64,000 nucleotides of DNA from Bispira polyomma (lineage: Eukaryota), in the NCBI GenBank assembly GCA_965649765.1, contig OZ287752.1, forward strand, positions 11,470,001 to 11,534,000, read 5' to 3'. Shown here piece by piece: positions 23,278 to 57,000 of this stretch. Within the stretch, counting starts at the first letter, position 1. Every line of letters starts with the position of its first letter. Position numbers and translations under genes: made by a program. The notes beneath the pieces were generated by a model that made no database searches, was not told the DNA's origin, and saw nothing but the letters and a program-made list of their open reading frames with translations.

Positions 23278-23494
23278 TTACACGTAACATTCACAGCTTG
23301 TGGGCAACTCCACTCCGTGAAACTTCAGACGCAGTTTAGTAATGTCTACCTTTACTTTTTTCCCCGCATTGATAAAGATCACATAGAGGAATCCAAAAAA
23401 TTGTTTAGGTTTGAGTGTTGTCATCAGCATATTTAAGAAAGTTTTGTGTGGCTCGCAGCTAAATCCTTGCTTGTCCCTACAGCCATCAGTAAAC
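23278..23494 (-). CDS. Cystine-knot gene last exon
   Basis: ttttag|, phase 2; FTDGCRDKQGFSCEPHKTFLNML..KFHGVELPTSCECYV*, with the PxxCxC knot terminus. Confidence 0.78.
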
Positions 23495-23785
23495 CTAAAA
23501 AGCAACAGTAAAATCTAAACAGGCTTTGTTGGTAGATGGGTATCCATAATACCGGTCAACTCATTATATCGTCTGTTGTGTTTTTAAAGAACTATATGCA
23601 ATGGAAATTAATATTGCAAACATTGGCCACTTCATGACTGTGAATTAAAATACAGAATACTTTATTTTATTTTAAGAAAATCGATATATTACACACTGAA
23701 ATGTGTGGCAACCAGTATTATAACCCGACCAGTATTATGAACGCCTATGTAAGACCTTTAGTGTATCATCCTAATTAGCTGTTAA

Positions 23786-24202
23786 AGGTAGACTCACACT
23801 GAAGCGCATCAGGATAGGAATCAGTATGTCCGTAAGATTTTCCCAAAACAGATAATATTAGTTTCAATTCAGATTGGACAGAAAATCTGGACGTGCGATA
23901 CTCACACAATGTGTGAATAAACAGTAGATTATTGTAAGAAAAAGTAGAATGAAAGTATTGTTAGAGATCTTATATTTTGTGTCTGTGTACTTTACTGGAA
24001 CAATCTTCATACTACTAAAGGGGATTGTTTTTGTTGTTGACATCTGATTTTGAGACATTTTACTTACTTTTAAATCGGTGTACAATTTTATCCGTTCCAG
24101 ATTGCCAGATCCGGAACGGTGATGAGTGGACACTCATACTCTCTGCTCTGCACTAGGTGGTTTCCATCATGGAATTCTTATCTTACATGTGTGAATCTAC
24201 CT
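23786..24202. mobile_element. PIF/Harbinger-type MITE in the last intron of the cystine-knot gene
   Basis: TIR AGGTAGACTCACAC / GTGTGAATCTACCT; TAA TSD. Confidence 0.75.
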
Positions 24203-25541
24203 TAATAACTATAGTGTCAGGATATTTATTGTCTTTGTAATTATTTTTATTCATTATGTATATATTGAACCCAATTCGCAAAAAACACCCTTAGAATACA
24301 TATAGGAAAAAATAAGACAAAGGACATACACTTATAATATATATATATATAAATAGGTTTGTTTTTACAACTAAATAAGAGATTATGTTACACAAAAGTA
24401 TTTAAGTTTAAAAGTAATTTCACCTTTTGAGAGAAATACACTGTCATTGAATCTATTGCATCTGAGACTGTATCTGATACTAAAAAGACTTGCGATATTT
24501 TTAACATTTACATAATCGTCAGTTGTACAACCTTCAAAACATGTTTTCTTTGTACAATTATGAATAAAGTCATTACTGTAGGACAGACTATTTTCCAAGC
24601 TGATACCACATTTGAATCTAATTTCTGAAATTGTATTTGCTTGTTTATACTTTGACCAAATACAATAAATTTTTTTTTTTCTAGGATAAAAATTGACATT
24701 ATATTCTTTTCTATACTGGCCCATAACATTAGTCATACGTTTTAAACTTGATAGTTTATAGTTACCAGTTTAAGGTTTTATTCACTACCTCATACCTGAA
24801 TGTTTGTAAATATGTAGATACCTTAAATCTTTACCTTTTCAAATTTAAGAATACCTCTTGTGAACAAAAGAAAATAATTTTTGTACTTAAAAATTTAATA
24901 TTTATTATAGAGGACATATGGGTCTGTTGCTGTATCAAGATATGCAAATATATATCAAGCTCTGAGTAATTTTCAAAAAAGCATAAAAGTCATGTCTTTT
25001 TGGGTCTCAAATTGACTTTCAAGATTCAAATTCAAATGGAAAAAAGCTTCATCCCCCAATTTATCCACATACCAATTCTAAATCAATTGCATCAATTATC
25101 TTTTTTAGTTGGAATTAGGATGTCATCACTATGGCCTCTACTTTTCATTAATGCTAAGAATGTTGATAATTTTTACTTGTTTGTAGGATTTGCAAGGAAC
25201 TGACTCTTGTTTATTACTGCTTTTAGTGGAAGAATTGTTGTTATCAACACCTTAATGTGATGTTGGCCATCTGGTATCACAGGAGCAGAAGTTAACGATA
25301 ACAATTTTTGCCAACAAAGATGCTGTTAATATTTGACACCTGCATTCCTTAACTACCTTTACATATCAATGTTATAGATGCATTTCCCTTTTAAAGGAAC
25401 TAATATATTATGCAAATCTGTTTCCCATTGGCCACTGCTGTGCTGAGTAGGATATTACTTAATTTGAGTTATTTAACTCTACTAAGTAACTACTGGGCCA
25501 ATATATATATTTGCATTGTGTATAAGTTTGCTAACCCTTAC

Positions 25542-25706
25542 TTGCAGCATGCATAGTCATACTTCTGGACATAGAGTGGAAGGTCAGCAGGATCCTGGAC
25601 ATAATATGTGATCCCTGTAATATTTCTAATAGTCCGAATCCACACCGCATTACATTTCTGGCCATGATCATTTATACTGCCGGTATATGCATCACATGAG
25701 AAAATG
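25542..25706 (-). CDS. Cystine-knot gene exon 4
   Basis: ttgcag|..AA|gtaagg, 165 nt, open in phase 2-2; IFSCDAYTGSINDHGQKCNAVWIRTIRNITGITYYVQDPADLPLYVQKYDYACC. Confidence 0.78.
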
Positions 25707-25840
25707 CTGCAACAAGATAAATATATATCAACTATATCGGTCGGTGGCTATATATTAGTGCCTTAATTGATACTTGTTTCTGACAGGACTGTAAGTTCAC
25801 ACTCATTTTAGTCCCTATAAATTTTCCTTACAAGCTAGTT

Positions 25841-26021
25841 GGGGGCTGTGGTCGTTAATGTGGGTTCGATTTCTGTTCGTTCCTTCATGTGGGAAAGTTT
25901 GTGAGGTAGTTGCTGTTGGTCGTTGGTTTGCAGCCCTTCATCACTGATTTTTATCCACACTTCAACCAGGCCATCACAATATGAACTAAACTGTTGGAAG
26001 CGACGTAAACCAAATTCAAAT
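25841..26021 (+). mobile_element. Degenerate tRNA-derived SINE (related copies ~36806-37030 +, ~46580-46760 -, ~46928-47185 +)
   Basis: GGTTCGATT B-box, shared CATGTGGGAAAGTT central motif, CAAATT tail. Confidence 0.6.
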
Positions 26022-26220
26022 ACAAGGTAAGTCTTGAATCTGACTCACATTGTTTTACAGTGTTTATTGTACATATTAGAATTTGTCTGTATATTATATT
26101 AACCAGGTTCCGGTTTTTAACCTGTTATTGAGGAAACCTTATGGCTTGAGTACCCTTAATGAATTGTACACGGTTAATTGTTGAATACTGACAGAGAGTG
26201 GAGTGAAGTGGTTAATATAC

Positions 26221-26481
26221 CTTATGCAGCAGATGTGGTTTGACAAGCATTCTTAGTGGGACAATCTTTCTTGGTGACACAAATATTCTCGGTGGCACGT
26301 TTTTGAATGTCTGGCCAGTTATTCTCGGTGGCACGTTGTTCAATGACAAATTCACCAGTTTTGTTATCATAAAGCTTGAATAGACCCGGATAGAGTCTCA
26401 GCCAGACTGGTTCCGGATATGGTTCTATACTATCCTTTCCTTTGCACCATTTCTTGGTGGTTTCGACACAGTTTCTGCATG
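26221..26481 (-). CDS. Cystine-knot gene exon 3 (prodomain, KR site, frameshifted end)
   Basis: tttttcag|..G|gtatat; CRNCVETTKKWC..IQKRATENICVTKKDCPTK, then either NACQTTSAA* or, with one base added, ECLSNHICCI. Confidence 0.75.
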
Positions 26482-26794
26482 CTGAAAAAAAATCAGTTTT
26501 ATTTGTGACTAATGAAACAGTTTCTACACTCCAAACAAAAAGAAAATATTGCAAATTAACAAGTATGAGAGACACTTTATGTCATTCACAGTTGGCTGTA
26601 CAAACCATTTTACATAAAGACACATCTGCAGCACAGATCTAAATGTATTTGAGACTATACAATAACAAACATAGGTATTTGGTACAAATCAACGCTTATG
26701 TAAATACACACATATAACGGGGGTATACAGCTTATTATATAATATTAAAGTTTAAGACAAATATTAAGTTCTAGTTCAACAAATATATTTATAT

Positions 26795-27308
26795 ATATGC
26801 AGTAAAAACACCTATGAACACATCTGAATAGTAAACATATCTATATAGTGCACACATTTAAATAGTGAACACATCTGAATAATAAACCCATCTGAATGAA
26901 TAGTGAACACATCTGAATAGGGAACACATCTGAATAGTGAACACATCTAAATGAATAGTGGTCGCCCTTAACAGTAAACACCTCTGAATAGTGAACACAT
27001 CTGAATAGTGAACACATCTGAATGAATAGTGAACACATATGAATAATGAACATATATGAATAGTGAACACATCTGAATAGTGAACACATCTGAATGAATA
27101 GTGAGTACATCTAACTAGTGAATACATCTGAATGAATAGTAAACATCTCTAAATAGTTAACACCTCAAAATAGTAAACACCTCTGAACAGTGAACACCTC
27201 TGAAAAGTGAACACTGTTGAATAGTGAACACCTGTAAATAGTGAACGCCCTTAATAGTGAACACCCCTTCATAGTGAACGCCCTTAATAGTGACACATTT
27301 GAATAGTG
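26795..27308. repeat. 17/21-bp satellite (GTGAACACATCTGAAT[GAAT]A), left part
   Basis: Visible tandem units; the array resumes at 32110. Confidence 0.92.
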
Positions 27309-30300
27309 ACAAGATAAGAGTGGCCCAGGGGGCCACTTCGGCAGATGATCAGGAGAATGTTTGATAGATGTTTGTATTAGATGAAGGTGTTAGCTTGATA
27401 AAAATGTGAGATATGTATGATTTTGTAAGGGTAGGTTGTAGTTGTAGCCAAAATCATAAAATTTGTGAAAAGTTGTCAGACTCTGAACAAGATACCCTGT
27501 GGGCCAAAAATCAGGTCGAAATCGCTCTATCTCGCACTGTTTAGGAGATAGCAGACATTTTTCCGGAAAAGATGCGGAAATTCAGGAGGCCGCTAAAATT
27601 ATAAAATTTGTGAAAAGTTGTCAGACTTCGAAAAAGATGCCCTGTGGGTCAAAAATGAGGTCGAAATCAATCTATCTCGCACCGTTTAGGAGATAGCGGA
27701 CATTTCCGAAGAAGAACTGGAAATTCAAGCTGGCCGCCAAAATCATAAAATTTGTGAAAAGTTTTCATAGCCCCTCAACCAGATGCCTGATGGCCCAAAA
27801 ATGAGGTCAAAATCGCTCTATCTCGCACCATTCATGATATAGCAGACATTTTTCTGGAAAAGACGTGGAAATTCAAGATGGCCGCCAAAATCATAAAATT
27901 TGTGAAAAGTTTTCATAGCCTGCCTATGTGTGTTAAGACAGGCCTGGAATAAGAAAAGACCTATCAGACAGAACGTAATGACAATAGCATCAAACTTATT
28001 CGACGATGTCAACCTTTCTGTTTTTAGAGGTCGGGGAGGTAAGTCGGGGTACTTTTAGAAAATATCAAACCTGTTGAATATCCTTCCAAACTACCGCGAC
28101 AACCCCGTTTTCACCCCTTAAAATCGGCAAGGTTGAGGGCCAAATTGGCATAGTGGAACCACCATTTAAACAAGAATGTAGTGACCACTGTAGCGGTCAG
28201 AGATTAAAAATTGTTCAAGCAAACGAACAACAAGATGTGAATGCCTGAATGGGCATATCGTCAGTTTCCATCTGATTTATGACCTTCATGACATCAACTT
28301 GACCTTGATCCTAAGGTCGTAGTTCAAATCTCTGGTTTCGTATAGGCTCACAATACATTGATTACATTCCAAGTTTAAAAACTCTTGTTAATAAGATATA
28401 AAGCAAAAACATAAAAATTGGCCTTTTTGGGGCCAGAAAAGGGACCTTGACAGATCCGTTTTTTAAAACCTTTACCAGTAAGGCTGCTGATTGTTAAAAT
28501 AATATACCAGAAAGTTTGGTGGCATTGTAAGTAACCAATTAAAGAGAAGACACAAACTCCTTGATTCCAAGGTCATAGGTCAAATTTGACCAGTGCATTA
28601 GCTTCTCTGACCTGGTTTTCTATATGTTTATAATACATTCAAAGTGTCAAAATGCAATAATTAATTATAGTTATTCATGTTTCATAGATTTAAACAAAAA
28701 AATTTTAAAAAAATATCCAAAATTTAAAATCTGAGCAAAATGCCATAAAGTGTTTTTAATATCTATGTGGTAAAGTATACATTTGCAAAATTTCAGACTG
28801 ATCCTTCAGTCATTTTGGAGAAGATTAACCTGCAAATATTTTGAATAGCCTGACTAATATATGTTTTCTACATTATCATGTTATGAATAAATTTGTTAAT
28901 TATTGTTCTCTACAAAAAAAAATCAAAATTAATGTGGACTTTTCCTCCCCCTCAATAAAGCTAATAGGAACTTTTCCTGGTGGGGAACTTCTGATTCAAT
29001 TTATGGATGGGGGACTTCTCCGTACACCTATTACACAGTTTTTAATAAAGTAGGTATCTTCATCTTTAAAAGCCTAAGGGTATGTATATATCATGCCTTA
29101 ATATCAATATTATATAAAATATATGCTGATTATACATTAAAATAAATAAAATATTGCATGTATCAGGTGAAAATTCTGGATGACTTATAGTATTATCAAC
29201 TACCGTATTTGACATAATTACCGCATATGCCCCATTAACCGCACATCCTGTAGTCCTCTTCCTGGGAGTTGATGCATCCATCCTTACGATCTGGCTATGT
29301 TTTTCATTTTTCTATTGGCTGATTGTTGCGCCTTAGAAGATACCTAGCATCAATAAGGCTCGTTAAAAATGCATCATACAATCCCCTAATCTTATGTTTG
29401 GTATGGTTCTCTATTTAAGATATTACTTCAGCCTTATGTTAAGTATCAGCATGTACCTATGCATATGAGAATTTATAGAGGAAAAAAATAATTCTGCAAT
29501 AAATACTATATAAAATTTTGAGTTAGTACTCCGGTTATTTTCCAATACAAATGAATAACTGCAATCAAGACTTTTAGTGCCTGTGAAAGTAAACTTGTCA
29601 TAGTGTTACGGTGACGGGAGCAAGCGCGGTAGCAATTACCGGTTGCTTTGAGGTTGTAACAGGAAAAGACAAAAAGTTTCACTTAACAAATTTATTTAAC
29701 AAATAAAATAACAACTACAGAATTACAGAATTATAAAATTACAAAATTACAAAATTACAGAATTACAAAATTACAGTCAACTGAGATACCCTTAATAGCT
29801 CACACAATAATACAATAATGAAATCAATCTGACCTGACCACAGTCCTGTCCACTCAAATAACAATTAAACCAGTTTGTCCACTGTATCCAGCAATCTGTC
29901 TTGAGATCCACTCAATGTCCACACAATGCCTGTATCCTGTTATCTGTTTAGCGTCCACGCACACAAAATGTATATATCCAGAGAATCTGCACAACTAAGC
30001 TATCCAGTCCAGGATGCAAACAATATCCAATATGCAGTAAATCCAATCTCTGGTAGATCCACAACTTTTATCTAGTTCACTCCAATGAGTTCACCACAAA
30101 TGTATATAACAAACAGTATAGTAGTTCATATAGCATTCATATAGCACCTCAGCTCAATTAAATCTCTTCTGTGGCCAGACTGTCAACCCTTATATATACC
30201 ACTGCTAGAGAAGGTTGCTAGAATGTGTAAGCAATCGCTAGGACATTCCAGAGATGAGATATACATATGAATACAACTTTAATAACCTTCAGAAATAAAA

Positions 30301-32109
30301 TAGAACCGGTTTCTAGAAGCTTAGGGGTTTCCCCAAATCTATAAATAGCTCACTCCAGCAGAGTGTAAAACCATTAGTACTAACTAGACCGGTTTTTCTT
30401 CCACACACCACAATGTCCCCATATGTAACAATAGTAACTGACAGCTTCCTGCACTCAGGTTTACAAAGCTAGAAATTAGTCATAAATTTGAATACTGCAG
30501 AAAGTGACTGATAAAGTAGCCTTGTTGAAAGATATTTAAGGCTCAACTTTATTGTATTTAGGAAAATCAGTATGCACCCCTATTGGTGGCAAAATAATGA
30601 CTTCTAATGTGTTTAGCATGATTAATGTAATTATAATATAATCTGATATATTATTTAAACAATAATGTTAAATTTAAATGAATAAATATACTATTTAGAT
30701 CAATGGTGAGAAAAACAAGCCCAAGCAAGGTTACTATTTCTGTCCTTCCATTAACTGCAGCAAATGGCCATTATAATCCAGTAAAAATTTAAAGTAAATG
30801 ATCAAAATTTTGCTTCAAGTTTCATTCGCCAAGTACATATTTTATTTCTTGTTGTAGGCTGTAGAAGTTTGAAACACTTATGCCTTTAAAGGCTAAGCAA
30901 ATTTATCATACTGACAGCAAGAGAGTAAGTTACTACAGTTACCAAATAAATTTTTCAATAACTTTTTACTTTTTTCAGTTTTACAGCAAATTTTAATAGT
31001 AATACTTCATTGTGGAGCTTTCTATTATCAGATAGATTGTACAATTTACCAGTGTGAACACACCTGCAAAAGATATGCTATATATTTTAAAAACCAAGAA
31101 TCAGCCTTAAACTAAATAACAATTGCTGCAGATTTATTACATTTTTAATCTATCTGTGTTCAATCAAACCACTTATTTTTTGGCTTAGGAATAATTTTTA
31201 ATATTTTTATCCTGTAGTGACATTATTTAAAATATATATATCCCCCATATATATACATACATTGTAACACTTCAAATAGTTCAAAACAGAATGCTACATT
31301 AGTCAATAACATCATATTGTACTATTTGAACCCTCTACTATTAACAGCAACTGGCTTGTACTAACTGGACCCTCTCTACTTCAAAGAACCTTTAATTGGT
31401 CCCGCCACAACACATACACATCTTCTATATACTACAAGGACAGGTAACACCCATAAATAGCCCTCCAACATCAAACATACTTTAAATTGATTCGTCCAAA
31501 ATACACACACACATGTTCTATATAATACAAGGGTAGATACCTAGCAACAAAACAATTAAAACACTAGTAACAACACACACAAACACACACACTATTTGTG
31601 CACAAACCAAGGACAAGTAGTGGGGGTGGGGGGGGAGGGGGGAATTGGCCAGTTGCCAATTACATGTAATTAAGGCACATGCATAAACACAGCCTATGTA
31701 AAAAGATGAAAGACAATTAGGCCTTGGGTTAATTGGTGATGACTCATGCCACTCACACCACAGTACAGAGTTATAAGAATAAGAACACAATCAATGAAAG
31801 GTATTGCCTTTGAGGCTGTGTATTGTATGGCAAGTCATAGCTGTCAATCATATTCTCCTTAGCAACAGGCAGTGGTTTTTATAAAAACCTAAATAAGTCA
31901 TCACAAATATATCAGATCAAGAAGCCAATTCAACGGCAGCATATACACAACACATAATGTACCCATACCAATTTTCAGGTCACAATTTCTTCATTTACTG
32001 AGAAAATTTGCTGTCATCAAACGGTTGCTAGGGAACAAGACCTCTAGTAAAGTTAATACAGCATACGTAACTTCAGCTAAAGCTGAAGTAACGTCATCTG
32101 CCGTAAAAA
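27309..32109 (-). mobile_element. Non-coding Helentron-family element inserted in the satellite
   Basis: Minus-strand 5' end TTTTTACGGCAGATGACGT plus hairpin (32070-32109); 3' end TCATCTGCCG-AA-GTGGCCCCCTGGGCCAC-TCTTATCTTGT (27309-27348). Both nearly match the termini of 54073-59226. Internal ~146-bp repeats at 27450-27920. Confidence 0.82.
29604..30430 (-). mobile_element. Solo LTR (Gypsy-like), 827 bp
   Basis: TGTTAC...GTAACA termini, 4-bp TSD ATAG on both sides; minus-strand TATATATAA (~30190) upstream of AATAAA (~29691). Confidence 0.85.
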
Positions 32110-33178
32110 TCTCTAAACAGTGAACACCTCTGAATAATAAACACCTTTGAATAGTGAACACATCTCAATGATTAGTGAACACATTTAAATGAATAGTGAA
32201 CACATCTAAATAAATAGTGAACATCTCTGAATAATGAACATATTTGAATAGTGAACATATTTGAATGAATAATGACCACATATGAATAGTAAACACATCT
32301 GAATGACTAGTGAGTACATCTAACTAGTTAACACATCTGAAGAAATAGTGGGCACATTTGAATGTTGAACACATTTAAATAATAAACAAATCTGAATGAT
32401 TAGTAAAAAGATTTGAATGGTGAACATATGAGAATGAATAGTGAACACTTATAAATAAATGGTGAACATATTTACATAGTGAACACATCTGAATGAATAG
32501 TGAACACATCTGAATGAATAGTGAACACATCTGAATGAATAGTGAGCACATCTAAATAGTAAACACATTTGAATAAATAGTGAACACATCTGAAAGGTGA
32601 ACACATCTTTAATAAGTAAAAACATCTAAATACTAAACACAACTGAATGAATAATAAACAGATTTCAATAGTGAACATATCTGAATGAATAGTCAACACG
32701 TCTGAATGAATGGTGGACACATTTGAAAAGTAAACATATCTGAATGAATAATGAACACATCTGAAGAAATAGTGAACATCTCTAATTAGTGAACATATCT
32801 GAATGAATAGTGAACACGTCTGAATGAATGGTGGATATATTTAAAAAGTGAACATATCTGAATGAAATAGTTAACACATCTGAATAGTGAACACTTCTCA
32901 ATAGTGAACACCTCTGAACAGTGAATACCTCTGAACAGTGAACACCTCTGAATAGTGAACACCTGTAAATAGTGAACGGCCTTAATAGTGAACGCCCATT
33001 CATAGTGAACGCCTTAATAGTGACACCTCTGAATAATAAATATCTCTAAACAGTGAACACCTTTGAATACTGAACGCCTTTGAATAGTGAACACCTCTGA
33101 ATATCGAACGCACTTAATAGTGAACACCTTTGAATAGTGAACATCCTAAATAGTGAACACCTCTGAATAATGAACACC
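32110..33178. repeat. 17/21-bp satellite, right part
   Basis: Same GTGAACAC unit as 26795-27308. Confidence 0.92.
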
Positions 33179-33471
33179 CCTCCATGTTTTGTCTCCATTG
33201 CATTCATACTAGGGCTTACCCATGTGAAGTGAACACTTCTCTACTAATATTGTTTTCCCCTAAACAAGGGGAACCTAGTGAACCTAGGTTCATTAAATGG
33301 ATAGAATGTTGATAAAATTTTGCAATACAACTGGGTAAAATCTAGGGAAAGCAATTTTCTTAATTTTATATGCACCCAATCTAAGAAATATTTCTTTGGT
33401 GTGACCTATAATTCAATAACAAAACTGATATGAAGTTACTGACCAAATAATGATGAGAATGTGCTACATAC

Positions 33472-33588
33472 GTTTGTTACATGGAGCTCTGATGTCCAAG
33501 GGTCCAGAATATAGATAGAATATTTGCCTGAGACAATCTATCTCTCCAGGGTCGACCGGACATTTCCTGTTGGTGATCTGAAGTTCCA
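33472..33588 (-). CDS. Cystine-knot gene exon 2 (prodomain)
   Basis: tttttcttattag|..C|gtatgt, 117 nt, phase 1-1; VELQITNRKCPVDPGEIDCLRQIFYLYSGPLDIRAPCNK. Confidence 0.65.
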
Positions 33589-34357
33589 CTAATAAGAAAA
33601 ATCAAAAAGCAGAAATGGATCTTCTTGTGGATTAACAAAACTTATAGCAGGTTATACTGTCTTCTACACCGGTTTTCATAATATTCATTGGTTACAATGC
33701 CATCTATTGTGTGAATGTAGAAACTCCATGAATTATCTTTGAATATTTAAAGGTTTTAGAAGTATATAAACTAACTTAACGTATTTGGAAGATATCTTTC
33801 CCTTTGTGTGACAAATGATGCTTTGGGCTGCAAAAATGACCCAGTTGGTATGATAAAGACAGTGTGTAACAATAACACTGCTTCTTATTTGTTTACTTTA
33901 TTACTATTTTACTTGGGTACATTTCACAATTGACGGCAATTGACTTTCATGTCCTGCATTCGAATGAGAATACACTTGTTGTTGGTTTAAAGCTTACACA
34001 ATACATTGTAATAATAAACAAACACACATACATAAGCAAAATGGCCAATACTGTTTCAGTTTGTGCCGTGGTCACACTGAGCATGCTCATGTTTTTATTC
34101 GCTTCGTTTTAAACAGAAGCAAACAAAAATAAACGAAGTGAAACGTAACAAAAAATCGATGTATAGGCCGTTTTTCACTTGTTCTGTACACGTTTGTACA
34201 CACATTCAACATGTTTTAATAGTCGCTTCAATTATGTTTGTACTGTTAGCCATGTTTGAAAATACATTAACCATGTTTTAAAATACATTAGTCACGTTTC
34301 TAAACACGTTTTAATCTCATTCTCCTCGTTTTAAATAGGTTGCATTCAATTCATTTA

Positions 34358-34978
34358 TGCCGTGGTCAAACTGAGCACGTTTTTTTGTAAACGGGAGAAA
34401 ACAAAGTGAAAATCGGGAAACGTAGCAAAAATCTATGTATGCGCCGTTTTGTAGACGTTCAGTACGCACCTGTCAGGTTTGTACACGCATTTAATATGTT
34501 TATATAGCCCTTTAAAATATGTTTAATTTGTTAGCCACATTTTAATAATATGTTAGCCTCGTTTTTAGAAATACGTTAGCCACGCTTCTAAACATGTTTC
34601 AGGCTCGTTCTCTTTGTTTTTAACATTTGTAAACCCGTTTCGTCCTTATTTTCCTCGTCCTTAATAATGTTGGTAGGTATAGTTCCTTTTACTCCCATCC
34701 TTCATGTCAAATATGCAATAAATATGTGTCATACATTTGCCGCGAACGTACCACCCGTTTTTGGGAAATTTTCAGTAAATGACTAAAAACGTAAAAAATT
34801 TTGAGCAGTCCGAAAATTAAGACATTCAGGATATTAAGGAACCATCTTATCCCCGCATGCTTACGTTTTCTTACACACACTACGTTTTGCTTACGTTTTG
34901 CTTACGTTTACTTACGTTTTACCTTACGTTAGCTATTTTCGTGCGTGAGCAAAGCGTAAGCTCAGTGTGACCACGGCA
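34358..34978. mobile_element. PIF/Harbinger-type MITE, preceded by a truncated copy at 34064-34345
   Basis: TIR TGCCGTGGTCA(A/C)ACTGAGC / GCTCAGTGTGACCACGGCA; TTA TSD. Confidence 0.85.
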
Positions 34979-35813
34979 TTACATCATTAACGTTTCTAGT
35001 TATTATTTGGATGAATTGAATGTCTGATTGCTGTCCTTTAAGTCATATGCGCATTGAAGGCATGTCATACGTTACCGGCAAATGCACCAACCATTTTAGA
35101 AAAATGTTGTGCAGCATGAAATTATGAGATTAAGGGACCATATTTACTTCAACCCACTACGACCATTCAAATGCTTATGTTTTCACCTTACGTGTGCTAT
35201 TTTTAGCCATTTTTTTGTGTGTAATCGAAAGGTAAGTCCAGTTTGACCACATTATTAGTGTGGTATCCAAAGAATAAGTACATTAGTGCTGCTATAAAAA
35301 ATCTGCAATTATCAATTATTATTAATTCAAGCTATTTTTAAATTACTATTTATATATGCTGGTACAAATATTGTTAATTTATTTTGAAAATTTGAATAGT
35401 GTCTTTAATTAAATGTCCACTGTCCTGTCCACTAGATTGCCCACTTGTTATCTACAAAGTCAACTATAATGCTTTTAATTAGATTAGGTATGGTCTATGT
35501 CCTATCGATCATTTTGACTCAAGGAGTTTTAAGCAAGAGGTGTCAGAAAGGTTTTCATCTAAAATCCTGTATCAGTAGGAATAAAAGTGTAATCTATTAA
35601 ATGAAGAAAAATATCAAGAATGGATGCTTTAAGACAGTCATTTTCAATTAAGAAATTAATATAAATTAAAATTACCACTACAAGTTAAGTTATTTTTTTC
35701 TCTGAGGTTATTAGCTAATCAAATAAATTCACGGTCAGTAATATTGCAATAAAGAATAAAATTTCACTGATTCAAGTCCAATACAGAATGTAAAATGTAG
35801 AAGTGATATTTAC

Positions 35814-35931
35814 CTGGCCCTATTTTATACGGTAGCGTTGGTAGACATCTGATGCACTTCTCACAACTGTGTCCAGAGCAATTAGACACAAATAACAGGA
35901 CCAACAGAACAGAGACTTGACAAGTCCACAT
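35814..35931 (-). CDS. Cystine-knot gene exon 1: signal peptide
   Basis: MWTCQVSVLLVLLFVSNCSG-HSCEKCIRCLPTLPYKIGP, donor G|gtaaat, phase 1. Confidence 0.75.
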
Positions 35932-37570
35932 ACTGTACAGCCGAACTCTATAAAACGATGACACTTTCTCTGTGACCACTAACTAACCACCCAACACTAT
36001 AATGGTCTTTTTCTTCTCAGTTTTAGTTGCCTATTTCAGGAAAATGTATGTGTGCAAAATAGAAAAAAAAAAAACAACAAATGAATGGGGTATACTGTTT
36101 TCTTAAAGGCTATTAAGTCAGCAGTTTTATCGTTTACATTAAAAGCACTATAATTAGCTGAACTAACGGCTTGAATGTGTTTTCATTTGACACACAATAA
36201 ATTGAATCTTTTATGTTGTGTCAGCTGTTTAATCTGCCTGTGTAATTTTTCAAGCAAGAAGCTGTCAAGTGCTAAATATGATTTCAGTCATTACATTTGA
36301 TGTTCATAAATGTTCTTTTTATCCATTCAGATTCTTTCATTATGTTTTAATTAACACAAAGTTGGAAAATCTATGAATTCACATTTAAAGGAGCAACCTG
36401 CATTTGTAATGACAAACTCAAAGGAAAATAGTGTACTCCCTGAAGAGATGTATTCTAAGTAAAATGTGTTATCTGTAATCTGCATGTCACATATAAAATT
36501 AATCATTGTTTTCAGGTACAGAATGACATGTTGACTGGGTGATACTCTTATTCACTGAAGCTTCCTTCTGTCAAATTGGTCCACTAAAATATATAACAAT
36601 CTGCTGGCCACGGCAGAATAAGCATTACTTAGATGACTACATTGTGGATTTATGATATATTTTCAATTGAGCTTTGTTCACATGCTTACCAATACGACAT
36701 ATCCGTACTGATCTGTACCAACATTACATACTGACGTACTGATCCTCAGGATGTCAAATTTAAAGTTTTTGGTTTTCAAACTATAGTTATCTTAATTTTG
36801 AAGGGAGGGCTACGGTGGCCTAATGGCGAGAAGAAGCATTAGTTTCACAATCACCAGTCTCTCACCAATGTAGGTTTGAATTTAGTGTGTTGCTTCAGGT
36901 GGGAATGTTTGTCCAGTACTTACCATAGGCCAGTGGCCATATAGTGTCTGCACTGGTTTCTTCCACCATTGAATCTGACCGTCGTCATATGACCTAAGCT
37001 TTTAAAAACAATGTTAAACCCAACTATATTTAAGTTCAATTTCTGAATCATTTTAGATACCAAACCAGCCTCTGTTTCCTGTTGTATATATGTATTTTCA
37101 TTAAATTCTCTATGGCAGTCAAAATTGCTGACTGCCTGATTTTTTCAGTATACACAATCTGTACTGGTATACATACTGCAGGGATTAGAACTCTCCAAAT
37201 AAATGCATAAGGGTGCCATTATTTTACACACTGGTGATTAGTACTGAGGTATGCCATGCTCGCATGCATGTAAACGTAGCTTTACTTCCAATAATTTTTT
37301 GACAAACCTATTAACCTCAGGTGAAGAGGGCCAACCAAGCTAGTCAAACTACAACACTCGTGACCTTAAAGGGTCTGCCTGACTTGCCCTCTATCATATC
37401 TATGACCCCTTTGAAGGTCAAACTCATATAATTTGACTTGAATGAAACTATCAGTTGCATGCTGCAAGGCATTTCAGTCGCACAAATTTACTATTTTGAG
37501 TATCAACAATTTTGTTATTGGTAACTGGCAAATTACATAAACCATATATAACCAATCACATTATTTTTTG

Positions 37571-39745
37571 CAGGGGGTCTATATCTACCAGTGTAGTGAA
37601 TACAGGGGTCTATATCTACTAGTGTAGTGATTATAGGGGTCCATATCTACCAGTGTAGTGATTACAGGGGTCTATATCTACCAGTGTAGGGATTACAGGG
37701 GTCTATATCTACCAGTGTAGTGAATACAGGGGTCTATATCTACCAGTGTAGTGAATACAGGGGTCTATATCTACTAGTGTAGTGATTATAGGGGTCCATA
37801 TCTACCAGTGTAGTGATTACAGGGGTCTATATCTACCAGTGTAGGGATTACAGGGGTCTATATCTACCAGTGTAGTGATTACAGGGGTCTATATCTACCA
37901 GTGTAGTGATTACAGGGGTCTATATCTACCAGTGTAGTGAATACAGGGGTCTATATCTACCAGTGTAGTGAATACAGGGGTCTATATCTACCAGTCAAGT
38001 GATTACAGGGGTCTATATCTACCAGTGTAGTGAATACAGGGGTCTATATCTACCAGTGTAGTGAATACAGGGGTCTATATCTACCAGTGTAATGATTACA
38101 GGGGTCTATATCTACCAGTGTAGTGATTACAGGGGTCTATATCTACCAGTGTAGTGATTACAGGGGTCTATATCTACCAGTGTAGTGATTACAGGGGTCT
38201 ATATCTACCAGTGTAGTGAATACAGGGGTCTATATCTACCAGTGTAGTGAATACAGGGGTCTATATCTACCAGTCAAGTGATTACAGGGGTCTATATCTA
38301 CCAGTGTAGTGAATACAGGGGTCTATATCTACCAGTGTAGTGAATACAGGGGTCTATATCTACCAGTGTAGTGAATACAGGGGTCTATATCTACCAGTGT
38401 AGTGAATACAGGGGTCTATATCTACCAGTGTAGTGATTACAGGGGTCTATATCTACCAGTGTAGTGAATACAGGGGTCTATATCTACGAGTGTAGTGATT
38501 ATAGGGGTCTATATCTACCAGTGTAGTGAATACAGGGGTCTATATCTACCAGTGTAGGCATTACAAGGGTCTATATCTACCAGTGTAGTGAATACAGGGG
38601 TCTATATCTACCACTGTAGTGAATACAGGGGTCTATATCTACCAGTGTAGTGAATACAGGGGTCTATATCTACCAGTGTAGTGAATACAGGGGTCTATAT
38701 CTACCAGTCAAGTGATTACAGGGGTCTATATCTACCAGTGTAGTGAATACAGGGGTCTATATCTACCAGTGTAGTGAATACAGGGGTCTATATCTACCAG
38801 TGTAGTGAATACAGGGGTCTATATCTACCAGTGTAGTGATTACAGGGGTCTATATCTACCAGTGTAGTGAATACAGGGGTCTATATCTACGAGTGTAGTG
38901 ATTATAGGGGTCTATATCTACCAGTGTAGTGATTACAGGGGTCTATATCTACCAGTGTAGGCATTACAAGGGTCTATATCTACCAGTGTAGTGAATACAG
39001 GGGTCTATATCTACCACTGTAGTGAATACAGGGGTCTATATCTACCAGTGTAGTGAATACAGGGGTCCATATCTACCAGTGTAGTGAATACAGGGGTCTA
39101 TATCTACCAGTGTAGTGATTACAGGGGTCTATATCTACCAGCGTAGTGAATACAGGGGTCTATATCTACCAGTGTAGTGATTATAGGGGTCTATATCTAC
39201 CAGTGTAGTGAATACAGGAGTCTATATCTACTAGTGTTGTGATTACAGGTGTCTATATTTACCAGTGTAGTGATTACAGGGAGTCTATATCTACCAGTGT
39301 AGTGATTACAGGGGTCTATATCTACCAGTGTAGTGAATACAGGGGTCTATATCTACCAGTGTAGTGAATACAGGGGTCTATATCTACCAGTGTAGTGATT
39401 ATAGGTGTCTATATCTACCAGTGGAGTGATTACAGGGGTCTATATCTACCAGTGTAGGCATTACAAGGGTCTATATCTACCAGTGTAGTGATTACAGGGG
39501 TCTTTATCTACCAGTGTAGTGAATACAGGGGTCTATATCTACTAGTGTAGTTATTACAGGGGTCTACATCTACCAGTGTAGTGATTACAGGGGTCTATAT
39601 CTACCATTGTAGTGAATACAGGGGTCTATATCTACAAGTGTAGTGATTACAGAGGGTCTATATCTACCAGTGTAGTGACTACAGCGGGTCTATATCCACC
39701 AGTGTAGTGAATAAAGGCAGTCTATATCTACCAGTGTAGTGATTA
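37571..39745. repeat. 31-bp minisatellite, ~70 copies
   Basis: ACAGGGGTCTATATCTACCAGTGTAGTGA(A/T)T, head-to-tail with no spacers. Confidence 0.97.
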
Positions 39746-41724: not shown

Positions 41725-43697
41725 ATAATTAAGAGTGAAGTCATTATCATTTACAGGCCACCACGATTTGTGCGACAATTCTGATAACAGCTGGTGGGGT
41801 ACTCTTTTGTGTGAAAAGATTCTTGAAAGGCAATCAGCCATTACATTTTTTACACCGGGAATATGTTATAGCTGTAGCTTTATGTTATATATGGCGACCT
41901 CAAGCCATATAGCTCTAGCAATGAATGCAAGGGAGTCGTCCCTTTTTTTTCCTGTATTCAAAGTGTATACCACGGCTATGTTATCACACCATATATGTAG
42001 AACAGAATTGCGACACAAATTACCCCATTTTCTAAGTGACACTAAAATGTTCCACATTTCGTAATGAACAATAGTGAAATTAGTGGGTGTATTGTTTGGG
42101 AAAGTGGAAGCATACACATTGTTTTTAAATACAGCCCCCACTCCCATGAGGGAGGCATCCACAAAGAATTCATAATTAGCAGTGGCTTTTGTGTGCATTT
42201 CCACCACCCCATTAAAGGAGTGGAGAAAAACCCGAAACCAATTAAGGTCACGCTTGAATTCATTGTTGAGGGAAATGTTAACTTGTGGGTAAGAATCATG
42301 TAGTAATGCAAACATCCTATTTAAAAATACACGCGCTGGTTTACACACCGGTGTATGTACAGGAATTTTCCTAATAGAGACTGAAGTTTTTTTCTGGTAC
42401 AATTAGAACGGCCTTGCCATTGTTCACACATATCACGAATATCTGCCATTTTTTGTTCAGGTATTTTTAAAACTCCAGTACGCGCATTCACAATTATACC
42501 CATACACGTAATGGACTCAGAAGATGTTTCAACAAGTGCTCGATAAGGGAGTACAATGTTTTGAAGGACTGTTCTGCTTCCTTAGGATTATTTCCTGCAC
42601 TATATCATCAATGTAGTTGTAGATAGGGTAGTTTTTACTGCTCATAAGCCGGCGTATAAAATCTGTTACTATTTCACAGATGGCGGTGCCGTGCTTATAG
42701 CCCATCATCACGAACAGATCGATGTATGTTTTGTTGTTCCAATTTAAAGCTGCATAATTAGAGTCGGCAGGGTCTATTCTTAGGTTCCTAAATGCCCTAG
42801 ATAAATCGTTTTTCTATAACATGCAATTAGGACCTAACTCAATAATTCTGTCTACTAACACGTCAATATTAGGGAGGGTCAAACGAAACTCATGGTTGTC
42901 ATAAACACCATTTAACGCTGAATTGTTGACAGATGAATGGTCATACGGCCAACAATTATTCAACGTGTGTTGTTACTCTTTGGACGCGTCATAACAGGTG
43001 AGAAGTGTATATTGGTAAAGGGGGGTGAGGTGTTAAATGGTCCCGCAATAGCCTTGTGCAGGCATTCAGTTATAAAGTATTCATCCACACTACTTTTGGG
43101 TTGATTGGCAGAGTCATGGTTTTTAGCCATGTTATTAACTTTAAAACCTTGTTTTTCTATACACAAAGGAAAACTGAATTCCAGATATTCTGGCAATAGT
43201 ATATTGGAGTCTTGAGACATTAGGTTTCTCCAAGCAGGGATGTTTAACTCTGATGGTACTGGGATCCGTGCTCCCATGTAATTTGGGCCCCCAATTTTGT
43301 TTACTCTGTTATTGGCTAAAATAGCCCATTGTTCTAGAGTCTGATAATGGATTTTGTTTCTACCTTGAGGTATGCTATATACCGGTTTGTAAATACACAT
43401 GAAGCCAAAATTGTCCTTAGACTTGTGAAACTGATTGGTTTTGTGTAATTCCCGCTTTACACATGTGTCAATTATAGGTTCTGAAAGGGAGCTACCCTGA
43501 ATGTCAGATTTGTTGACAGAAGGAAAATGGTGTTGTACCATAGACTGTAGTGACACAGGACTTATGGCAATATCCCCCCTTGAGGGGGAGGAGAAGAGAC
43601 TTGCTGTATATATTTCTGGGACACTAACTTGTTTACGTTTTGGTTTAATTACACTTTTTCTGGAGTCAATAGCAAGAGTTGTGGAGGGTGCACACAC
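41725..43697 (-). pseudogene. Reverse transcriptase-RNase H of the Ngaro-like element, frameshifted
   Basis: ORF pieces 42960-43697, 42529-42711, 42321-42503 and 41866-42402 carry consecutive RT/RH motifs. Confidence 0.88.
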
Positions 43698-54072: not shown

Positions 54073-57000
54073 TTTTTTACGGCGATGACGTCATGTCCGG
54101 TATGGAATACCGGATATTACGTTTATCAAGTTGTAGTTTTAATAGAAGCCATCGTGGGTGGTTACCGTTTGAGGACAGGAAGTTCCCCTGGAAGTATGGG
54201 GACTGTGTGTCTAAAAGTTTTGTGTATGTGTGTCTCATGGGTCATATATGCTGCCGTTGTAATTTGAGTGCTGTCCGTTCTATGGGTCTAGAGTATTTAG
54301 TAATTTAATAGCAATCGGGGGGGCCGTTGTTAGGTTCAAGTTTGAGCGATAGGTATTTTTCCTGTTCAAAGTCTCACGAGTCAGCGCCCCCCTCATTTGG
54401 GGGGGTAGCCTTCGTAGATATCAATTAACGAATGTCCCGTGAAACTTCCTCCTTCATATCATCAGCAGTGTTGTGGTGGTGAAAAGTAATTATATAAATG
54501 TTGTTTTTTTCATTTTCATGTCGGTAGCATTGCTGGAGGGGGAAGGGGGGTCGTTATTTTTGTGAAATATTAACACACACTTAAAAAGGCAAGGTTGCTT
54601 TCCCAACACGTGTAAATATAGATGGGCTCTAATTGAAGCCATTCCTAGCAGTCTGTCAAAGTCAATCAATAAATATCAAGAGGCCAGCCCGCTCTTTCCT
54701 ATGTTGGCACGAGTCCAATCACACAATGAAGTAGTACAATATGACGTCTTCATCTATAAATAGACATGGCCTACAATTGAACTCGTTTTCATAGAAGGGG
54801 GTCAATTACAGGCCATGTATACTTAGGGGATAGGGGGGGCAGCCTCTGCTTTTGTAAATGCGTCTTTATGGTACTACTTTTGTTTTGTTTATTGATTTCT
54901 TGGCTTGTCGTGTGTGTGTGTGTGTGTGTGTGTGCATATGTATTGGGGAAGGGGGAGGGGTGGTTATTTAATACTAAGTCGTATAATCTTGGCAAAAGGC
55001 CAGGGGTGACTTCTTTAAGTGCATATATCATAAATCTGTTTTTCTTTTTTTGGTTGGTGTGTGTTGCTCATGTCAGGATGGAATGACAGAGTCATCGGTT
55101 GGGTGTACTATGCCTACACTATTTCTTATGTCCTTTTCCTTTTACTCCTTCCACAATATTTCTTATCACAAATATTTTGATCTCATTATTGTTGTAGCTA
55201 GAATGTTTTATTATGAAATCTATCAGAAGAAATATACTTTTCTTATTGTGATAAATGTACTTACCACAACTTGTGACTAAATCTTTTTCAAGGCAAGTCC
55301 CTAGCGATAAATAGAATTTTTTATTGTGATAAATGTATTTAACATAACTTTATTAATGCAATTATTTCTTTTACTTTGAACAATGTACGATACAATGGAA
55401 GGTAGTGCTTCATAAAATTATGCTGTGCAACTTACGAGCTGTATAATAATTATGTAGTATGTTATTTCTCTACTTGCTATTTGTCATGCATTTTATATGT
55501 GCACAGGTGGTTAATTATAGCGGAAAGGGTGAAACACTTATTACTTTTGGAGTAAATATAAAAGAATTTTTTCATCTCGTACTCCCAAATTAAACCAATA
55601 TTTTTTTTTGTCGTAGCAAAAACTCCATTCGGGGGGGAGGGGGGGGAGCAAGGTAATAATTGGGTGTAATTGGGGAGGGAGGGGGGTGCCATAATATTTT
55701 ATTTAACAACAAGCATGTATGTTACTAATAAAACAAAAAGAATAAAAGGCATTTTAAATTTTTTTTCCCACCCAAATTTTTATTTTTTTTTCTTTCTTGT
55801 CATTAAATTGGTACGCCTGGGCGTACTGACGTTAATGGTAGCTATGCCCCTGCATGGTTAGTGGAATTGCTTGTGTCTAATTATATTACTTGAACAAAAT
55901 ATGATTACTTTAATTTGAACTTTGTAATTACAAAAGAAGCCTGTAACAAAACAATCAAATAACGAAATCATAAACAAGGGAAACCTGTATGGAGAGATAA
56001 ACACATGGATGCACTATAATAATACATGTTGATGCAATATATAATACATTTACAACACTGATATCGATGAATAGCAAAACAATAGAAATAAAATGTGAAC
56101 GATTAGGATTCATTTGTGGTAATGTATCATCGTATGTAATAGTAGACATGTGCCTGTGATATTCGGTGTTCTGCGAGGTAATATCTGTTTTTGTCACGTT
56201 CAACAGTTCTTTCTTGGTCTGCACCAAAGAGACTCTGTTTGGAATGTCTTGTCTACATCTGTTCTTACAATAAAGTATATAAGCTATATTTATTAATGTC
56301 GCGAAAATACAGTATCTTGATCCTCTAAATTTATTTTTTCTTATTTCTCCTATTTATAGCTTCTACCTGAAACTGTATCCTTTGTATTACAACTTTTACT
56401 TAACACTGACGATGACAACAATTCCGACACCGACATAGATGATGATGAAACAAACAACATCACTCTAACTACACCTATCAATATCGAGCTAAAAAATGGC
56501 ATCACAATTACACAACGCAAAAACCCACGTGTAATACGTACAATCAGATACAACAAAGAACGTGACCCTGACAACTACTACAGAGAACAATTAATGCTAT
56601 ATATACCTTGGCGAAATGAAGAACACGACCTCCATAGTGAAAACTGTTCCTATGCTCAGCATTATGAACAAAAAAAAAACATCATTCAAGAAAAGTCACT
56701 GCCTTACAACTGGTCAAGTGATGTATTAGATCAAGAACAAGCAGAAGCCGATAATTTTGAAGATATTCAAGCACAAGTTGCGCCTTCTACTGGATATGAA
56801 GACTTAGAAGATGAACAAACAGGCACCTTAGAAAGTCTCAATTTTAAATACTTTAATCCAGACACCCATGAATATCAACAATCATATGACATTGCACAAG
56901 ACATGGGTATGGCACCTCAATCTACACAAGCTGAAAAGCAACTATTAGCAGGTTGTATTCCCGATTGCGAATACAGGAAACATATACAATCTCTCTACCC

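What the first reader, a model, noticed from the sequence alone, without database searches (positions are those of the whole stretch)
23278..35931. Hidden five-exon Spaetzle/neurotrophin-like cystine-knot cytokine gene
Seen: five minus-strand GT-AG exons spread over 12.6 kb of repeats join into a signal peptide, a 9-Cys prodomain, a dibasic KR site and ICVTKKDCPTKECLSNHICCIS..RNITGITYYVQ..YVQKYDYACCKFTDGCRDKQGFSCEP..VELPTSCECYV*. Known: the N-x2-G-x3-aromatic/V..Q..C..C..C..PxxCxC layout is that of Spaetzle-family cystine knots (Toll ligands with the neurotrophin fold). Inferred: a divergent invertebrate cytokine with an extra C-x5-C-x4-C-x5-CC module. Its 13 mature-region cysteines leave one free, possibly for a covalent dimer. 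Two of the exons are absent from the ORF track.
Basis: partly seen in the sequence, partly recalled or inferred. Interest (0 to 1): 0.82.

Follow-up and report, generated by a model that had tools for sequence, protein, structure and literature searches.

The report
Frameshifted copy of orphan knot-like cytokine gene
The five hidden exons are real and belong to an unannotated family of at least 18 secreted, cysteine-rich pro-protein genes in this invertebrate genome, but this copy has lost one base and cannot make its ligand domain, and neither a Spaetzle identity nor the cystine-knot fold is shown.

Summary
All five minus-strand exons exist at the stated coordinates with canonical GT-AG borders. 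They do not join into an open frame. The spliced length is 878 nt, and the frame from exon 2 ends at a TAA (26222-26224) one base before the exon-3 donor.

A 94-98% identical twin locus 5.5 Mb away on the same contig has all five exons, one more A in an A-run (window AAA, 26239-26241) and an intact 292-codon frame reading ..PTKNACQNHICCIS... The window copy is therefore a frameshifted paralogue or allele, or an assembly slip. Reads could not be consulted.

The gene belongs to a real family:
- At least 18 last-exon homologues in this genome, all with the same intron phase.
- Distant paralogues keep collinear exons 2-5 and an RRKR/RKKR site followed by CC.
- The core has seven cysteines.
- Last-exon dN/dS is 0.18-0.55.

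No Pfam or PDB sequence match exists, whether Spaetzle, NGF, IL-17 or PDGF. Models of the last exon alone draw almost only cystine-knot cytokines in Foldseek, led by VEGF, IL-17 and PTTH, but none is significant. A cystine-knot ligand is plausible, Spaetzle membership is unsupported, and the family is an orphan.

The parts
35814..35931 (-). Exon 1: ATG at 35931, hydrophobic signal-like leader (MWTCQVSVLLVLLFVSNCSG), start of the Cys-rich pro-region. Ends one base into a codon; donor GTAAAT.
   Evidence: 100% identical protein in the twin locus.
33472..33588 (-). Exon 2: pro-region, 117 nt. Begins and ends one base into a codon. Acceptor ttttcttattAG, donor GTATGT.
   Evidence: Twin 97%. Homologous exon in C10 paralogues at 46-50% identity.
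26221..26481 (-). Exon 3, 261 nt where the twin has 262: rest of the pro-region, KR processing site, C-x5-C-x5-C-x4-CC module. Broken by the missing base.
   Evidence: C10 paralogues have the homologous exon ending RRKR/RKKR + 3-4 residues + CC.
26297..26302 (-). Codons AAA CGT (Lys-Arg), the putative pro-protein convertase site. Window PDIQKR, twin RDIKKR, C10 paralogues SRRKR and GRKKR.
26239..26241 (-). A-run AAA that is AAAA in the twin locus. This one-base deficit shifts the frame.
   Evidence: (alignment)
26222..26224 (-). Premature TAA created by the frameshift, one base before the exon-3 donor. It removes exons 4-5 from the product.
25542..25706 (-). Exon 4, 165 nt: first long hairpin of the putative knot (..KCNAVWIRTIRNITGITYYVQDPADLPLYVQKYDYACC). 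Donor GTAAGG.
   Evidence: C10 paralogues have a 132-nt exon with the same phases.
23278..23494 (-). Exon 5: C..C, LMTT..KP..FG motif, long hairpin, C-x-C, stop TAA at 23278-23280.
   Evidence: 18 homologous last exons in the genome. AF2 model of this exon alone has pLDDT 71.6.
27310..32102 (.). About 4.8 kb present in intron 2 of the window copy and absent from the twin. It splits a 17-nt minisatellite (26815-27309 and 32114-33178).
   Evidence: No terminal inverted repeats found.

Best explanation
The window holds a frameshifted copy of a genuine five-exon gene.

Intact form (twin locus, G000:C5:16969107-16976792, minus strand). It encodes a 292-residue secreted pro-protein in three parts:
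- a signal peptide;
- a pro-region of about 120 residues with 9 Cys;
- a basic (K/R)-R processing site, followed by a mature part of about 150 residues with 13 Cys.

Family. The gene belongs to a lineage-specific, unannotated family of at least 18 loci in this genome. The mature core has seven conserved cysteines: CC at the end of exon 3, one C at the end of exon 4, two at the start of exon 5, and C-x-C at the C-terminus. Their order and spacing fit a growth-factor cystine knot (I ~50 II 3-6 III 1-9 IV 43-70 V-x-VI) with one spare cysteine for a covalent dimer.

Inferred mechanism. The protein is secreted as a pro-protein, cleaved by a furin-type convertase, and the disulfide-linked dimeric knot acts as an extracellular ligand. 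The receptor is unknown.

Window copy. It lacks one A (26239-26241), stops at 26222-26224 and can make only the pro-region. It is a pseudogene, a null allele, or a homopolymer error of the assembly.

Shown: exon structure, frameshift, family, purifying selection and the conserved processing site. Inferred: secretion, cleavage, knot fold, dimer and ligand role.
For: - Splice sites and frames.
- Twin locus: all five exons, identical borders, an intact 879-nt CDS and one extra A.
- Family of 18 last exons with one shared intron phase and the conserved motif C..C......LMTT..P...YGH......N[IV].F..V..P.YC.C.
- Distant C10 paralogues keep collinear exons 2-5 with the same phases, RRKR/RKKR + CC at the end of exon 3, and 7 core Cys.
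- Last-exon relatives occur in other assemblies (P0001, P0004, P0005). On the ENA contig L037 only the exon, and not its flanks, aligns to this genome's C9 copy.
- Last-exon dN/dS is 0.18-0.55 between presumably intact pairs, and about 1.06 for the pair that includes a copy with an internal stop.
- AF2 models of the last exon alone (pLDDT 71.6 and 79.0) show two long paired strands.
- In both Foldseek searches nearly all of the top 50 PDB rows are cystine-knot cytokines: VEGF, PDGF, IL-17A/F, PTTH, NGF/BDNF, Spz1C, FSH, GDF. The top ESM Atlas row is an IL-17C cluster.
Against: - No statistically significant link to any known family or fold. Pfam and PDB sequence searches are blank or E>=0.3. 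Foldseek E>=1, and VIA Z<=2.3 or no match at all.
- Only one exon (half a domain) could be folded. A long beta-hairpin alone may attract knot cytokines without being one.
- The large protein search found no spliced full-length relative.
- The twin is so similar, introns included, that its agreement does not itself prove selection on the exons.
- The nonsynonymous:synonymous codon count between window and twin is 13:9 (about 0.5), which is compatible with relaxed constraint on one or both copies.
Confidence: 0.6

Rival explanations
1. One reading: a divergent member of the Spaetzle/neurotrophin family proper, that is a protease-activated Toll (or Trk/p75-type) ligand.
For: - It has a pro-protein with a basic cleavage site, seven core Cys including a terminal C-x-C, and one spare Cys, as in Spaetzle.
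- II-III spacing is x5-x6 in the window, twin and L027 copies, close to what I recall for Spaetzle (from memory, not tested).
- One paralogue ends in PSCC.
- NGF/BDNF and Spz1C appear among the weak Foldseek rows.
Against: - Pfam Spaetzle (PF16077) and NGF models match no exon.
- The whole-genome PF16077 scan finds one 25-bit site on another contig and none of the 18 family loci.
- The PDB sequence search finds no Spaetzle or NGF.
- Spaetzle and NGF rank below VEGF, IL-17 and PTTH in the structural lists.
Confidence: 0.12
2. A divergent offshoot of the IL-17 / Trunk / PTTH branch of cystine-knot ligands. These signal through double-FN3 receptors (IL-17R, Torso) rather than Toll.
For: - The best structural rows for the more typical family member are IL-17F (prob 0.66, TM 0.47), PTTH in complex with Torso (5aoq; VIA Z 2.3) and IL-17A.
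- The top ESM Atlas row is an IL-17C cluster.
- Invertebrates carry IL-17 structural types with the full six-Cys knot, and Trunk/PTTH are processed pro-proteins (PMC11087794).
Against: - The genome's 27 canonical IL-17 exons are found easily with PF06083, and none lies at this family.
- A profile-profile comparison of the last-exon family with those IL-17 domains gives a probability of 0.4%.
- All structural scores are insignificant.
- Canonical IL-17 domains here sit in one exon, whereas this family splits the domain over three.
Confidence: 0.18
3. Not a cystine knot at all. It would be another disulfide-rich secreted protein, such as a matrix, adhesive or antimicrobial component, whose last exon merely forms a long beta-hairpin.
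For: - No significant sequence or fold match.
- A neighbouring case in this genome that was read as Spaetzle-like turned out not to be a knot on follow-up (note s1-577503; not checked here).
- The family is large, clustered and fast-evolving, as effector families often are.
Against: - The conserved seven-Cys order with terminal C-x-C, the conserved furin-type site directly before the first core Cys, and the odd Cys count are all typical of knot ligands.
- Both Foldseek top-50 lists consist almost entirely of one superfamily out of 350,542 chains.
Confidence: 0.22
4. The frameshift is an assembly artefact (a homopolymer miscall), and the window gene is intact in the animal. Alternatively, the two 'copies' are the two haplotypes of one locus, one of them misplaced 5.5 Mb away.
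For: - The only frame-breaking difference is one A in an A3/A4 run.
- Window 3203-51440 is collinear with the twin region at 94-98% identity, introns and neighbouring genes included. That level is plausible for haplotypes of a highly heterozygous invertebrate.
- All splice sites of the window copy are intact.
Against: - A 3-base run is short for a homopolymer error.
- The window copy also differs at the processing site (RDIKKR to PDIQKR) and carries a 4.8-kb intron insertion and 25 substitutions. It is therefore a distinct sequence and not a duplicate of the same reads.
- No reads could be examined.
Confidence: 0.35

Closest known systems
Spaetzle (Pfam PF16077) and neurotrophins (NGF family)
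   Same: Secreted pro-protein with a basic cleavage site in front of a C-terminal Cys-rich domain. Cysteine order I..II-x(3-6)-III..IV..V-x-VI plus one spare Cys. Two long hairpins (I-II and IV-V).
   Different: No profile or sequence match at exon level. Longer IV-V hairpin (43-70 residues). The domain is split over three exons. The window/twin gene adds six more Cys (the C-x5-C-x5-C-x4-C module and a pair in exon 4). The family has at least 18 members.
IL-17 / PTTH / Trunk group of cystine-knot ligands
   Same: Nearest, though insignificant, structural neighbours of the last-exon model (IL-17F, IL-17A, PTTH 5aoq). A terminal ..C-x-C preceded by a long strand. Pro-protein processing in PTTH and Trunk. 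Gene-family expansion in molluscs, as for IL-17.
   Different: hhalign probability is 0.4% against this genome's own IL-17 domains. PF06083 does not detect the family. Canonical IL-17 domains here are single-exon. No R..SPW / RYP-type motif.
PDGF/VEGF family (PF00341)
   Same: Top Foldseek rows for the window's own last exon are VEGF-A/B. Short III-IV spacing, and one paralogue has C-S-G-G-C between II and III. An odd Cys count suggests an interchain disulfide.
   Different: The only sequence hits (E 0.35-3) align the family's C-terminus to the N-terminus of VEGF, so they are not collinear and are probably chance. There is no P-x-C-V-x-x-x-R-C-x-G-C-C signature.

Membership tests
Spaetzle (PF16077) | Match to the family profile above the curated cut-off | tested here: not met
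   hmmscan of each exon and of 21 last-exon homologues gives no Spaetzle hit at E<=10. The genome-wide PF16077 scan finds one 25-bit site at C2:73.72 Mb and none at this family. Tested exon by exon only; the joined domain was not scanned.
Spaetzle (PF16077) | C-terminal cystine-knot domain with 7 Cys, released from a pro-domain by proteolysis | tested here: inconclusive
   A seven-Cys core and a conserved (R)-(K/R)-K-R site are seen in the sequence. The fold of the whole domain was not testable, and the last-exon models give only insignificant knot-cytokine neighbours.
Spaetzle (PF16077) | Binds and activates a Toll receptor | not testable with these tools
   Needs binding and signalling assays.
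Neurotrophin (NGF, PF00243) | Match to the family profile or to solved NGF/BDNF/NT sequences | tested here: not met
   No Pfam hit. No NGF-family chain in PDB sequence searches with profiles A2 and A4 at E<=10.
IL-17 (PF06083) | Match to the family profile, or profile-profile similarity to bona fide IL-17 domains | tested here: not met
   PF06083 finds 27 exons in this genome and none at the family loci. hhalign of A4 against the alignment of 13 own-genome IL-17 domains gives probability 0.4%.
PDGF/VEGF (PF00341) | Collinear match to PDGF/VEGF sequences including the C-x-G-C-C region | tested here: not met
   Only non-collinear VEGF-A hits at E 0.35-3.3. No Pfam PDGF hit.
Cystine-knot growth-factor superfamily (structural) | Six Cys in the order I..II-x(n)-III..IV..V-x-VI, forming a threaded knot between two long beta-hairpins | tested here: inconclusive
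   The Cys order and spacing are conserved across paralogues. The last exon is modelled as one long hairpin. Foldseek top-50 lists are almost all knot cytokines, but E>=1 and Z<=2.3. Disulfide topology was not testable without the joined domain.

The most novel reading that the evidence does not exclude
The family of at least 18 loci, seemingly absent from protein databases, is a mollusc-type lineage-specific class of furin-activated, disulfide-linked cystine-knot ligands. Such ligands could be the so-far unidentified endogenous partners of the expanded Toll-like, IL-17R-like or Torso-like receptor repertoires of these animals. The window/twin gene would be a variant that carries an extra N-terminal three-disulfide module.
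Probability: 0.15. Interest if true: 0.75.

Novelty: new variant of a known kind. Interest (0 to 1): 0.4.

Why it matters
Which endogenous cytokine-like ligands, if any, drive the expanded innate-immune receptor families of molluscs remains an open question (my own background knowledge). A sizeable family of processed, knot-like secreted proteins that profile searches do not recognise would supply concrete candidates to express and test. For annotation, the case shows two things. A real multi-exon gene is invisible to ORF-based tracks. A single-base homopolymer difference decides whether a copy is functional, so the intact twin at C5:16.97 Mb, and not this window copy, is the one to study.

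Tried and rejected
- Word search with exon 5 found no candidate.
- ESM Atlas feature search with exon 5 gave no usable hit.
- The exhaustive profile search returned only six hits, three of them exon-fragment ORFs and none a spliced full-length protein. No database protein could stand in for the joined model.
- The contig of P0001 (L037) shares only the last exon with this genome's C9 copy. tblastx found no upstream exons within 10 kb.
- A candidate exon-4 homologue on C2:85.42 Mb was rejected. It ends in a stop with no donor.
- VIA-align against 48,161 chains gave no Z>=2.
- Rescue of the frame by an alternative donor was rejected. By inspecting the sequence, no GT upstream of the TAA leaves the phase that exon 4 needs.
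- Rfam on 20-40 kb found nothing.
- The 4.8-kb intron insert has no terminal inverted repeats.
- The joined (spliced) protein was never sent to any search, family scan or fold tool. Joining was done only inside scripts, to check length, frame and cysteine counts.


Full report
**Setting.** The window is G000:C5:11470001-11534000 of a 1.035-Gb, 75-contig eukaryotic assembly. It has 30-42% G+C and is rich in transposons and minisatellites. This is an invertebrate-style genome with an expanded IL-17 repertoire.

**Observation.**
- Reading the minus strand at the five stated intervals shows canonical borders everywhere: ATG at 35931..CCAG|GTAAAT; ttttcttattAG|TGGAAC..AAAC|GTATGT; ttttttttcAG|CATGCA..ATAAG|GTATAT; cttgttgcAG|CATTTT..TGCAA|GTAAGG; tgctttttAG|GTTTAC..GTGTAA.
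- Exon lengths are 118, 117, 261, 165 and 217 nt, a total of 878 nt, which is not a multiple of three.
- In the frame handed on from exon 2, exon 3 reads ..NICVTKKDCPTKNACQTTSAA and stops at TAA 26224-26222, one base before the donor.
- Exons 4 and 5 are open only in the frame that would follow ..HICCI at the end of exon 3. That frame has a TAA just upstream of ECLSNHICCI.
- The other quoted peptides, the 9-Cys pro-region and the KR (26297-26302) are there.
- The same reader also filed the missing base as a separate note (s1-637154).

**The twin locus.**
- Exon-wise searches of the whole genome find all five exons again at C5:16969107-16976792, on the same strand and in the same order. Protein identities are 100, 97, 96, 98 and 87%.
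- Alignment of exon 3 shows GTCAAAACC in the twin against GTCAAACC in the window.
- With that extra A the twin's exons sum to 879 nt. They give an uninterrupted 292-codon frame with 24 Cys, reading ..CPTKNACQNHICCIS.. (joined only inside a script to check the frame).
- The window copy differs by 25 substitutions (13 nonsynonymous and 9 synonymous codons). Two of them lie in the processing site, RDIKKR in the twin against PDIQKR in the window.
- The similarity is not confined to exons. Window 3203-51440 is collinear with C5:16948302-16990543 at 94-98% identity. The window has an extra 4.8 kb in intron 2 that splits a 17-nt minisatellite.
- The two are therefore either a recent segmental duplication or two haplotypes, one of them misplaced. 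Their agreement proves the exon model is reproducible but not that it is under selection.

**A real gene family.**
- Weak exon-wise hits led to a cluster on C10 (56.27-56.47 Mb) and to further loci.
- A profile of seven last exons finds 18 sites in the genome: C5 x2, C6, C9, C11, C13, and C10 at 23.2, 50.9 and 56.3-56.5 Mb.
- Every site has an acceptor in the same phase and the motif C..C......LMTT..P...YGH......N[IV].F..V..P.YC.C.
- Two C10 genes were followed upstream. Each has a homologous exon 2 at 46-50% identity. Each has an exon 3 that starts CRxCV..., carries YPG.F, and ends SRRKR-QAALCC or GRKKR-EVDPCC. Each has a 132-nt exon 4 with the same phases as the window's 165-nt exon, reading ..AY.G..T...TWYGV.F.HNSS..PP.NYQ.YN.VNC.
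- The mature core of the family therefore has seven Cys: CC, C, C, C, C-x-C. The window/twin gene adds six more.
- Last-exon dN/dS is 0.18-0.55 among apparently intact pairs. It is 1.06 for the pair that includes C10:56.345 Mb, whose exon 4 carries a stop.
- Outside this genome, the exhaustive profile search found three ORF fragments with the same motif (P0001, P0004, P0005).
- P0001 lies on a 1.4-Mb ENA contig. There only the last exon, and not its surroundings, aligns to this genome's C9 copy: 82% nt and 76% aa, with dS saturated and dN 0.23.
- Chance ORFs are excluded.

**What family?**
- Sequence methods give nothing. There is no Pfam hit for any exon or for any of 21 last-exon homologues beyond noise.
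- No PDB sequence hit appears with either profile, except non-collinear VEGF-A rows at E 0.35-3.
- PF16077 (Spaetzle) finds one sub-threshold site elsewhere.
- PF06083 finds 27 canonical single-exon IL-17 domains, none of them at this family.
- hhalign of the family against those IL-17 domains gives a probability of 0.4%.

**Fold.**
- Because a spliced model may only be searched exon by exon, the joined mature domain was not folded or scanned. That step is left out here.
- Two last exons were folded alone with the 21-sequence alignment. The window's has pLDDT 71.6 and the C13 copy's has 79.0. Both form two long paired strands with a loosely modelled connection.
- Foldseek finds no significant match (E>=1). 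In both searches the top 50 of 350,542 chains are nevertheless almost exclusively cystine-knot cytokines. For the window exon these are VEGF-A/B/E/F, PlGF, PDGF-B, IL-17A/F, NGF, BDNF/NT-4, GDF-11, myostatin and noggin. For the C13 exon they are IL-17F/A, PTTH bound to Torso, VEGF, FSH, Spz1C, PDGF, gremlin and activin.
- VIA-align gives Z<=2.3, and nothing at all in the wide search.
- The top ESM Atlas row is an IL-17C cluster at TM 0.45.
- I read this as a consistent hint at the fold class, not as proof, and as no basis for choosing Spaetzle/NGF over IL-17/PTTH/PDGF.
- Background on how these families relate, and on invertebrate IL-17 types, Trunk and PTTH, is in PMC11087794.

**Mechanism proposed.**
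- Inferred from sequence: the intact gene is translated with an N-terminal signal peptide (hydrophobic core, small residues before HSCEK) and folds with a Cys-rich pro-region.
- Inferred: it is cut after the conserved basic site by a furin-type convertase.
- Inferred: the C-terminal domain of about 150 residues forms a knot-type, disulfide-linked dimer through its odd cysteine and acts as an extracellular ligand.
- Shown: the window copy stops before the knot. Its stop lies about 170 nt upstream of the last exon junction, so its mRNA would be expected to undergo nonsense-mediated decay (general rule, inference).

**Verdict.**
- The window copy is broken, so the intact twin and the wider family are the real finding. 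Interest is moderate (0.4).
- It would rise if the joined domain folds as a knot and transcripts exist.

Noticed in passing
window 37568-39745: A long tandem array with a period of about 31 nt lies just upstream of the gene. It spans about 2.2 kb here but only about 0.7 kb in the twin locus (C5:16978468-16979182), seen as a ladder of offset BLAST hits.
   Followed up: no
window 26815-27309 and 32114-33178: A 17-nt minisatellite (TGAACACATCTGAATAG) in intron 2 gives the long 'MCSLFIQMCSLF' pseudo-ORFs. It is one continuous array in the twin and is split in the window by a 4.8-kb insert without terminal inverted repeats. The insert itself holds a 145-nt tandem repeat at 27447-27921.
   Followed up: partly
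Segments of this gene recur at 75-91% identity 25-45 kb upstream (C5:11425-11447 kb), suggesting a tandem duplicate.
   Followed up: partly
window 56594-59119 (+): An 841-aa ORF with PIF1-like helicase and endonuclease/exonuclease/phosphatase domains is a transposon-type protein. The adjacent stretches 51.8-56.2 kb have many 94-99% identical copies on other contigs, so they are recently active repeats.
   Followed up: partly
window 41869-42402 (-): An ORF fragment with a reverse-transcriptase RNase H-like domain (PF17917, just under the cut-off) is a retroelement remnant. The surrounding 40.1-45.5 kb has 77-83% copies on several contigs.
   Followed up: no
G000:C10:56345617-56345745 (L028): The family member at C10:56.345 Mb has an in-frame TAG in its exon-4 homologue, and its last exon evolves at dN/dS of about 1 against its neighbour. 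It is probably a second dead copy in the family.
   Followed up: partly
G000:C9:57.62-57.76 Mb and C11:11.3-25.7 Mb: At least 27 canonical single-exon IL-17 domains (PF06083) sit in clusters, a large IL-17 expansion in this genome.
   Followed up: partly
window 23278-23494 vs L025 804-1020: Exon 5 carries 16 of the 25 exonic substitutions between the two copies (7.4%, against 1-3% in exons 1-4). They are concentrated in residues 227-257 of the twin protein. The adjacent intron (23.7-24.4 kb) is also the least similar part of the duplication. This may be gene conversion from another copy or local fast evolution.
   Followed up: no
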